DNA of 63,407 nt, filler included, from Reticulomyxa filosa (taxonomy: Eukaryota > Protista > Foraminifera): the NCBI GenBank assembly GCA_000512085.1. It is 25 parts of 25 records of this genome, joined end to end, with 100 filler letters (N's around TTAATTAATTAA, not from the genome) between each part and the next. Parts side by side here need not be neighbours in the genome. Positions count along the whole stretch, not along the records: positions 13,215 to 15,853 come from ASPP01001603.1; 24 more parts are not named here. One strand, written 5' to 3'. Of this stretch, positions 13,467-13,710 are shown piece by piece (position 1 is the first letter of the stretch; every line of letters starts with the position of its first letter). A program made the position numbers and the translations under genes. Below the pieces are notes generated by a model. It was given only the letters and a program-made list of their open reading frames with translations. It was not told the origin of the DNA and ran no database searches.

Positions 13467-13710
13467 TAGTCTGGGTGAGACTTGCACTCACATCTATGCG
13501 AACTGCCTGAGTTTTCATCAAGATTTATATCACTGTTAAGGCACTTTAGTATGGAAACTGTCACTATGCCTTTGATCATTTCTGAGAACTTGTTTCAGAT
13601 AAATGTGCTTGGTAAGAAACCAACATCACTTATGAGAATTCAAGTACATCTTTAATGTTTTGGATACCACATTTCGTGGCAGACGCATGCTCTCTTTGAG
13701 CTACCAGACC
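13467..13710 (-). tRNA. tRNA gene (Gly-GCC if spliced at 37/38; Cys-GCA in an alternative register) with a 174-nt structured insert in the anticodon loop
   Basis: Acceptor GGTCTGG/CCAGACT+A, T8-A9, D stem GCTC/GAGC, anticodon stem TGCG/CGCA, loop CT-GCC-A, 5-nt variable loop, T arm GTGAG-TGCAAGT-CTCAC, and a T9 run 8 nt downstream. Confidence 0.8.

What the first reader, a model, noticed from the sequence alone, without database searches (positions are those of the whole stretch)
13467..13710. tRNA gene carrying a 174-nt chain of hairpins in its anticodon loop
All four tRNA arms and a Pol III terminator are present, but the halves are 174 nt apart (13503-13676). The insert folds by eye into about seven consecutive stems: GCCAC/GTGGT, ACATT/GATGT, ACTT/AAGT, TTGGT/ACCAA, CATT..TCTGA/TCAGA..AATG, AAGGCA..TAGT/ACTA..TGCCTT and CTTGA/TCAGG. 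Its last bases GGCAG complement the loop bases CTGCC. Eukaryotic tRNA introns are usually tens of nt. This could be a giant tRNA intron that releases a structured (possibly circular) RNA, or an unspliced tRNA-scaffolded ncRNA. Default tRNA scanners may miss it.
Basis: partly seen in the sequence, partly recalled or inferred. Interest (0 to 1): 0.88.

Follow-up and report, generated by a model that had tools for sequence, protein, structure and literature searches.

The report
Foraminiferan tRNA with oversized anticodon-loop insert
The genome of the amoeba Reticulomyxa filosa holds a real, unusual tRNA gene split at its anticodon loop by a 174-letter insert, longer than the 6-133 range that reviews give for eukaryotic tRNA introns; whether it is spliced, used whole or dead could not be tested.

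Summary
The split tRNA is real: minus strand 13710-13467, on a nuclear contig of Reticulomyxa filosa, downstream of a Sin1 gene. All arms pair (P>0.8); a split-cloverleaf descriptor found no match in 20,000 shuffles. ARAGORN scores it 98.3, just under its cut-off, as Gly(GCC) with a 174-nt intron at 37/38. The 'chain of seven hairpins' is not supported: the insert folds like shuffled sequence (z -0.3) and only two of the seven stems are firm. New here: the D-loop lacks GG and the T-loop has G55, but it carries A18-G19, the compensated elbow seen in 39 of 46 phage tRNAs with G55 (6 of 231 with U55), which argues against random decay. Against normal splicing: the junction lacks the C32:intron(-3) pair and 3-nt bulge in the register that gives a good stem; G1-U72, U31-U39 and a 5-nt D-loop are further deviations. 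No homologue, RNA run or foraminiferan rRNA was obtainable. Best reading (0.45): a deviant tRNA-Gly gene with an unusually long endonuclease-type intron. Rivals: dead copy (0.25), unspliced tRNA-scaffolded RNA, perhaps carrying a C/D guide (0.2). A new variant of a known kind.

The parts
13677..13710 (-). 5' tRNA half (positions 1-37): acceptor 5' strand, U8-A9, D arm with 5-nt loop AAAGA (A14, A15, A18, G19, A21 by my numbering), anticodon stem 5' strand, C32-U33, anticodon GCC at 13680-13678, A37; contains an A-box-like 12-mer 13703-13692
13503..13676 (-). 174-nt insert at the canonical 37/38 position (176 nt, to 13501, in the alternative register that has textbook endonuclease geometry); GC 34.5% against 51% for the body and 24-27% for the flanks
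13503..13507 (-). GGCAG, pairs with CTGCC (32-36) to form a 5-bp anticodon-intron helix
13588..13645 (-). irregular long stem-loop, the only locally stable part of the insert; holds a box C-like motif (13629-13623), a stretch like the SNORD121 guide and a CTGA box (13598-13595)
13538..13572 (-). second firm hairpin (AAGGCA/TGCCTT base), preceded by a further C-like motif at 13579-13573
13467..13502 (-). 3' tRNA half (38-73): anticodon stem 3' strand, 5-nt variable loop, T arm with loop TGCAAGT (G55), acceptor 3' strand, discriminator A73, no encoded CCA
13450..13458 (-). T9 run 8 nt after A73, possible Pol III terminator
14493..15848 (-). neighbour, not part of the element: Sin1/MAPKAP1-like gene (RFI_01634), same strand, ends about 780 nt upstream of the tRNA; identifies the host as Reticulomyxa filosa

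Best explanation
A nuclear, Pol III-type tRNA gene of R. filosa, most simply tRNA-Gly(GCC), with an unusually long (174-176 nt) intron of the protein-spliced kind at 37/38 and a deviant but internally compensated body. Shown: the cloverleaf forms around the insert; the insert sits one base after a CU-GCC-A loop start and its end pairs back over the anticodon; the elbow is A18-G19 with G55-C56. Inferred: Pol III transcribes about 255 nt up to the T run; RNase P and RNase Z trim it; the tRNA splicing endonuclease measures from the body and cuts after A37 and near 13502; the halves are ligated to a tRNA of about 70 nt, and the intron is released and is mostly unconstrained. Splicing at the 3' site is probably inefficient or non-standard, because the bulge is two bases short in the register that gives a good stem.
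For: Perfect acceptor, D and T stems and conserved U8, A9, A14, C32, U33, A37, G53, U54, C56, A58, C61; not chance. Insert at the canonical site with a 5-bp anticodon-intron helix, chance 0.0016. The 5' side reads CTGCCAC-G, the loop typical of eukaryotic tRNA-Gly(GCC) (own knowledge). G55 with an AG-type D-loop is a natural compensated pair: 39/46 against 6/231 in phage tRNAs of the fetched loci (the sequences are related and the loci were selected on this T arm, so the p-value is not to be taken at face value). An insert no more structured than shuffles is what an ordinary intron gives. The endonuclease tolerates varying intron length and works by a ruler (PMC10539383; PMC4090602, which also says the loop-intron duplex is not a prerequisite).
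Against: ARAGORN 98.3, 'possible pseudogene'; the 3' half scores only 12.5 bits on RF00005 and the 5' half nothing. In the good-stem register C32 faces C at intron -3 and only 2 bases lie between the helix and C40, where the human enzyme needs a 3-nt bulge plus the 31-39 pair. In the register with the right geometry the product has a weak anticodon stem (GU, WC, mismatch, GU, WC) and a 3-nt variable loop. G1-U72 and a 5-nt D-loop are poor for a cytosolic tRNA-Gly (own knowledge; D-loops of <=5 nt in 6 of 327 phage tRNA calls). Length is beyond the 6-133 nt range. No homologue, no RNA run, absent from the paralogous Sin1 contig.
Confidence: 0.45

Rival explanations
1. A dead or dying copy: a pseudogene of an intron-containing tRNA gene, or a tRNA-derived dispersed repeat, whose deviations (G1-U72, U31-U39, D-loop and 3' junction shortened) are decay and whose insert is neutral. 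Errors of the draft assembly could add to it.
For: Sub-threshold scores; four or five departures from the tRNA consensus in 70 nt; splice geometry broken in the useful register; not present beside the 85%-identical Sin1 paralogue; the assembly is 30.5% repeats with N50 3.6 kb (PMC13746701); insert unstructured.
Against: No mismatch in acceptor, D or T stems; A18 and G55 changed together as in natural tRNAs; no target-site duplication, tail or internal repeat. Even so its parent would have carried the same long insert.
Confidence: 0.25
2. An unspliced or non-decoding tRNA-scaffolded Pol III RNA: the tRNA body is kept as promoter, processing signal and stabiliser, the anticodon is masked in a 4+5 bp extended stem, and the insert is the payload, possibly a box C/D guide RNA.
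For: Elbow and acceptor, which RNase P/Z read, are intact while decoding features (junction geometry, 31-39, 1-72) are poor. The insert has three box C-like motifs and one CTGA; the order C, 24 nt, D', 15 nt, C' occurs in 0.55% of shuffles (post hoc; three C-like motifs alone P = 0.06). The best Rfam matches of the insert are C/D snoRNAs, with a 10-nt identity to the SNORD121A guide (E 1.6-2.4). Insert GC is above the flanks.
Against: All Rfam matches are chance-level, far below gathering scores. The SNORD121-like stretch is 2 nt further from CTGA than in SNORD121A; its presumed LSU target lies (own knowledge) in a segment that is variable in the Rfam consensus, and neither of two fetched LSU fragments has it. 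No exact D box at the 3' end; the guide is partly buried in the long stem; no complement of 6 nt or more to the host tRNA halves.
Confidence: 0.2
3. A tRNA of organelle or phage origin (NUMT or horizontal transfer) sitting in the nuclear genome, with an insert from its donor, for example a small self-splicing intron.
For: The exact 17-nt T arm occurs in 41 IMG/VR contigs, mostly as the T arm of phage tRNA or tRNA-like genes; short D-loop, A18/G55 and stem mismatches are typical of mitochondrial tRNAs (own knowledge); foraminiferan mitogenomes show no detectable tRNA genes (PMC10127745) and NUMTs are reported in a foraminiferan (PMC3079666).
Against: No longer match in phages, viral contigs, GTDB or JGI metagenomes; no group I hit; no U-G pair at a 5' splice site and no P7 G-C site found by eye; long 'introns' called in the phage loci were mostly chimeras of tandem tRNAs and none resembled the insert; the loop CTGCCAC is eukaryote-like; flanks are ordinary nuclear DNA.
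Confidence: 0.08
4. A chance juxtaposition of two tRNA-like halves.
For: ARAGORN with long introns gives scores >=98.2 in 0.2-0.3% of shuffled 2.6-kb pieces, which would be about a hundred calls genome-wide.
Against: The stricter descriptor gave 0 hits in 52.8 Mb of shuffles; the extra helix and the compensated elbow are not part of either score.
Confidence: 0.02

Closest known systems
Eukaryotic intron-containing tRNA genes (TSEN substrates), e.g. Drosophila tRNA-Tyr CR31905 with its 113-nt circular intron tric31905 (PMC4536317)
   Same: Insert after position 37, pairing back on the anticodon loop, Pol III-type internal boxes and T run.
   Different: 174-176 nt against a reported 6-133 nt (PMC4090602, PMC10275265); Gly rather than Tyr/Leu/Ile; non-standard 3' bulge; A18/G55 elbow, 5-nt D-loop; splicing not shown. 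From memory, not verified here: single plant and yeast tRNA genes with introns of about 170-290 nt have been mentioned, so a length record is not claimed.
Archaeal pre-tRNA-Trp with intron-encoded box C/D guide sR50 (PMC7994747)
   Same: Long anticodon-loop intron with C- and D-like motifs.
   Different: Eukaryotic nuclear gene; no strict bulge-helix-bulge; no complement to its own tRNA; boxes not significant.
Plant dicistronic tRNA-snoRNA genes (Kruszka et al. 2003, cited in PMC7994747 and PMC13578239)
   Same: A tRNA gene (tRNA-Gly in Arabidopsis, own knowledge) used as Pol III promoter for a possible guide RNA.
   Different: There the snoRNA follows the tRNA and is freed by RNase Z; here the extra sequence is inside the anticodon loop and a guide is unproven.
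Phage tRNAs with A18-G19 D-loops and G55 T-loops (loci L005-L045)
   Same: Identical 17-nt T arm; same compensated elbow.
   Different: Those are intronless, with D-loops of 7-11 nt; no further sequence kinship was found.
Kluyveromyces lactis tRNA-Gly(UCC), a bacteria-like body that gained an intron (PMC4090602)
   Same: A tRNA-Gly with a foreign-looking body and an intron in a eukaryotic nucleus.
   Different: No donor identified here; the insert is far longer than yeast tRNA introns (14-60 nt in budding yeast, PMC10275265).

Membership tests
Intron-containing eukaryotic tRNA gene (TSEN type) | Complete cloverleaf around the insert | tested here: met
Intron-containing eukaryotic tRNA gene (TSEN type) | Insert between positions 37 and 38 | tested here: met
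   ARAGORN fixed-site call Gly(GCC); the ends can slide, and a Cys(GCA) reading scores the same
Intron-containing eukaryotic tRNA gene (TSEN type) | C32:intron(-3) pair with a 3-nt 3' bulge | tested here: inconclusive
   Not met in the 174-nt register, met in the 176-nt register that gives a weak product
Intron-containing eukaryotic tRNA gene (TSEN type) | G18-G19 and U55-C56 elbow | tested here: not met
   A18-G19 and G55-C56 instead; a natural compensated form
Intron-containing eukaryotic tRNA gene (TSEN type) | A box, B box, T-run terminator | tested here: inconclusive
   A-box-like 12-mer present, B box has G at 55, T9 at +8 but T runs are common
Intron-containing eukaryotic tRNA gene (TSEN type) | Transcribed, spliced and charged | not testable with these tools
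   No sequencing run was listed
tRNA-Gly | C35-C36 and A73 | tested here: met
tRNA-Gly | G1-C72 | tested here: not met
   G1-U72
tRNA-Cys | U73 discriminator | tested here: not met
   A73
Group I intron in tRNA | Catalytic core (RF00028), U-G pair at the 5' splice site, G-C site in P7 | tested here: not met
   No hit at E<=10; U-G and P7 not found by eye
Box C/D guide RNA | C, D', C', D boxes in order with terminal stem | tested here: inconclusive
   C-like x3, one exact CTGA, no exact terminal D box; Rfam 16 bits against 44
Box C/D guide RNA | 10-21 nt complement to a host rRNA, snRNA or tRNA | not testable with these tools
   No foraminiferan rRNA obtainable; two unrelated LSU fragments and the host tRNA halves negative
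Box H/ACA guide RNA | Two hairpins with pockets, ANANNA hinge, ACA tail | tested here: inconclusive
   Two hairpins with ANANNA between and ACA after, by eye, but the second hairpin is 35 nt with no pocket and there is no minus-strand Rfam hit
tmRNA | G3-U70, no D stem, tag frame | tested here: not met
   U3-A70, 4-bp D stem, ARAGORN finds none
tRNA-derived SINE | High copy number | not testable with these tools
   The host assembly cannot be searched by DNA; absent from two other R. filosa contigs
tRNA-derived SINE | tRNA head followed by unrelated body, tail and target-site duplication | tested here: not met
   Both halves enclose the insert; no flanking direct repeat

The most novel reading that the evidence does not exclude
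A eukaryotic tRNA gene kept as a Pol III host whose anticodon-loop insert is a functional RNA (a box C/D guide released by tRNA splicing, or displayed unspliced on a tRNA scaffold): the archaeal pre-tRNA-Trp arrangement, or a natural tRNA scaffold, in a nucleus.
Probability: 0.12. Interest if true: 0.82.

Novelty: new variant of a known kind. Interest (0 to 1): 0.5.

Why it matters
Foraminiferan tRNA genes are almost unstudied (PMC11980380 notes a lack of tRNA abundance data for any foraminiferan). If spliced, this gene extends the reported length range of nuclear tRNA introns, shows that default scanners miss such genes, and tests how far the splicing endonuclease tolerates a short bulge and an A18/G55 elbow. 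It also suggests re-scanning foraminiferan nuclear and mitochondrial sequence, where no tRNAs were found, with long inserts allowed. If the insert is a guide RNA it would be a route of snoRNA expression I could not find described for eukaryotes. If it is a dead copy it matters little.

Tried and rejected
Default ARAGORN and Rfam on the piece: nothing. Hairpin chain: rejected by shuffles and pair probabilities. Plus-strand transcript: the insert has more G-U pairs on plus (6 against 3) but neither strand beats shuffles and all tRNA signals are on minus. Homologues: none in JGI metagenomes, GTDB, IMG/VR, phage or plasmid records; no protein-level copy of the 57-aa antisense ORF; not beside Sin1 genes on seven related contigs; the 'tRNA-Val/Lys' call in L003 is a low-score chance call. 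Chimera of two tandem tRNAs, the cause of most long-intron calls in the phage loci: rejected, no inner halves or repeats. Group I intron, tmRNA, tRNA-Cys: defining features not met. Resemblances recalled from memory to RNase P RNA, U3 box A and U6 were dropped because Rfam shows no match. Sequencing runs: none was listed. The R. filosa genome paper and a yeast Pol III paper are not held.

Full report
Source. The piece (13215-15853, 2639 nt) is a nuclear contig of the foraminiferan Reticulomyxa filosa. Its long minus-strand ORF is Sin1/MAPKAP1-like, its C-terminal part is 98% identical to RFI_03433, and RFI_01634, on a contig of 2639 nt, is 100% identical over 417 residues. The finding lies about 780 nt after the Sin1 stop, on the same strand, in AT-rich intergenic DNA.

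Observation. The tRNA is on the minus strand, G1 at 13710 and A73 at 13467. Default ARAGORN and Rfam find nothing. With long introns allowed ARAGORN reports it at score 98.3, below the cut-off of 100, as tRNA-Gly(GCC) with a 174-nt intron after position 37, or with equal score as tRNA-Cys(GCA) when the intron ends slide four bases. In the unspliced RNA all tRNA helices, and the helix between loop bases CTGCC and the insert end GGCAG, have pair probabilities of 0.8-1.0. Chance is excluded for practical purposes: 4-6 of 2000 shuffles reach the ARAGORN score, none of 20,000 match a split-cloverleaf descriptor, and GGCAG at the insert end has chance 0.0016. The hairpin chain is not confirmed: the insert alone has z -0.28; two of the seven stems are firm, two are partial, two are absent and one was not properly scored; one irregular stem at 13645-13588 is locally stable.

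Anatomy of the body. It departs from cytosolic tRNAs: G1-U72, U31-U39, a 5-nt D-loop AAAGA without GG, and T-loop TGCAAGT with G55. The last two are linked. The exact T arm occurs in 41 viral contigs, mostly in phage tRNA or tRNA-like genes, and among 277 distinct tRNAs of those loci with G or U at 55, G55 goes with an AG-type D-loop in 39 of 46 cases and U55 in 6 of 231. The element has both changes, so its elbow looks compensated, not decayed. These phage sequences are related and were selected on the T arm, so this shows that the pair is natural, not where the gene came from. Gly is preferred over Cys because the site is then canonical, A73 fits and Cys needs U73 (own knowledge).

Junction. 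The human endonuclease binds a C32:intron(-3) pair, a 4-bp helix and a 3-nt bulge (PMC10539383). In the register that gives a good anticodon stem and a 5-nt variable loop (intron 174 nt) that pair is absent and only two bases separate the helix from C40. Moving the 3' site by two bases (intron 176 nt) gives the textbook geometry and the loop CUGCCAC-G, but a weak stem and a 3-nt variable loop. A review notes that the eukaryotic enzyme works by a ruler and that the loop-intron duplex is not a prerequisite (PMC4090602), so splicing is possible but not assured.

The insert. No Rfam family is significant. The best matches are C/D snoRNAs (SNORD121A, 16 bits against 44, E 1.6-2.4). It holds three C-like motifs and one CTGA; the arrangement has a post hoc chance of 0.006 and the motif count 0.06. 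No foraminiferan rRNA could be fetched. The presumed LSU target (own knowledge) falls in a variable part of the Rfam consensus, and two unrelated LSU fragments lack it. There is no complement to the host tRNA and no group I core. This is a lead, not a result.

Relatives and expression. None found: JGI metagenomes, GTDB, IMG/VR, phages, plasmids, the antisense ORF, seven Sin1 contigs including an 85%-identical R. filosa paralogue that diverges at about 14119. No sequencing run was listed. The host assembly cannot be searched by DNA, so copy number is unknown.

Mechanism and rivals. Most likely (0.45) a Pol III tRNA-Gly-type gene whose long, largely unconstrained intron is removed by the tRNA endonuclease; the fold and junction are shown, transcription, trimming, cutting and charging are inferred. 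A dead copy of such a gene is next (0.25): several deviations and a broken junction, against perfect stems and a compensated elbow. An unspliced or non-decoding scaffold with a payload (0.2) explains why elbow and acceptor are good while decoding features are poor, but the payload has no significant signature. Organelle or phage origin (0.08) rests on the T arm alone. Chance 0.02.

Comparison and novelty. Reviews give 6-133 nt for eukaryotic tRNA introns (PMC4090602; PMC10275265); the fly's 113-nt intron forms a stable circle (PMC4536317); archaeal pre-tRNA-Trp introns encode C/D guides and plants have tRNA-snoRNA dicistrons (PMC7994747). This locus works like an intron-containing tRNA gene but fails the standard elbow test and is inconclusive on junction geometry, so I do not file it as a standard member. 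I recall, without being able to check, isolated longer tRNA introns in plants and yeasts, so no length record is claimed. I found no description of this locus, but the genome paper is not held. Verdict: real feature, over-read insert, new variant of a known kind; interest 0.5, with a 12% chance of the more novel host-RNA reading.

Noticed in passing
window 15072-15158 (-): The Sin1-like ORF (RFI_01634) appears to read through an unannotated 87-nt, in-frame, stop-free GT...AG intron rich in T (translated as FFFF/KKK); the paralogue's and relatives' proteins lack this stretch.
   Followed up: partly
window 14493-15848 (-): Sin1/MAPKAP1 (TORC2 subunit) homologue, annotated as hypothetical; no Pfam hit at E<=0.001 but CRIM/SIN1_PH clusters by Atlas features; at least three copies in R. 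filosa.
   Followed up: partly
L004 (JGI 3300030743): A JGI contig encodes a Sin1 86% identical to R. filosa's, pointing to a close relative of R. filosa in that sample.
   Followed up: no
L005-L045, L084, L089-L091: Strong co-occurrence of T-loop G55 with A18-G19 D-loops in phage tRNAs (39/46 against 6/231); several such genes fall below ARAGORN's default score.
   Followed up: partly
L006, L008, L012, L017, L019, L022-L024, L027, L029, L030, L039 around the pattern match: A recurrent tRNA-like element (acceptor GATAAGG/CCTTATC, T arm with G55, no normal D or anticodon arm) that ARAGORN does not call, in a dozen viral contigs.
   Followed up: no
L055:1280-1610: Tandem array of tRNA-derived-looking repeats of about 70 nt in a metagenome contig.
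   Followed up: no
L087:1-361, L088:1-1103: Two IMG/VR 'viral' contigs contain eukaryotic LSU rRNA fragments.
   Followed up: no
window 13556-13584 (+): A 10-nt stretch resembles U3 snoRNA box A (from memory); no Rfam U3 match and no C/D boxes downstream, so probably chance.
   Followed up: partly
window 15827-15853: The contig ends in an AC dinucleotide repeat, as reported for R. filosa scaffold ends (PMC13746701).
   Followed up: no
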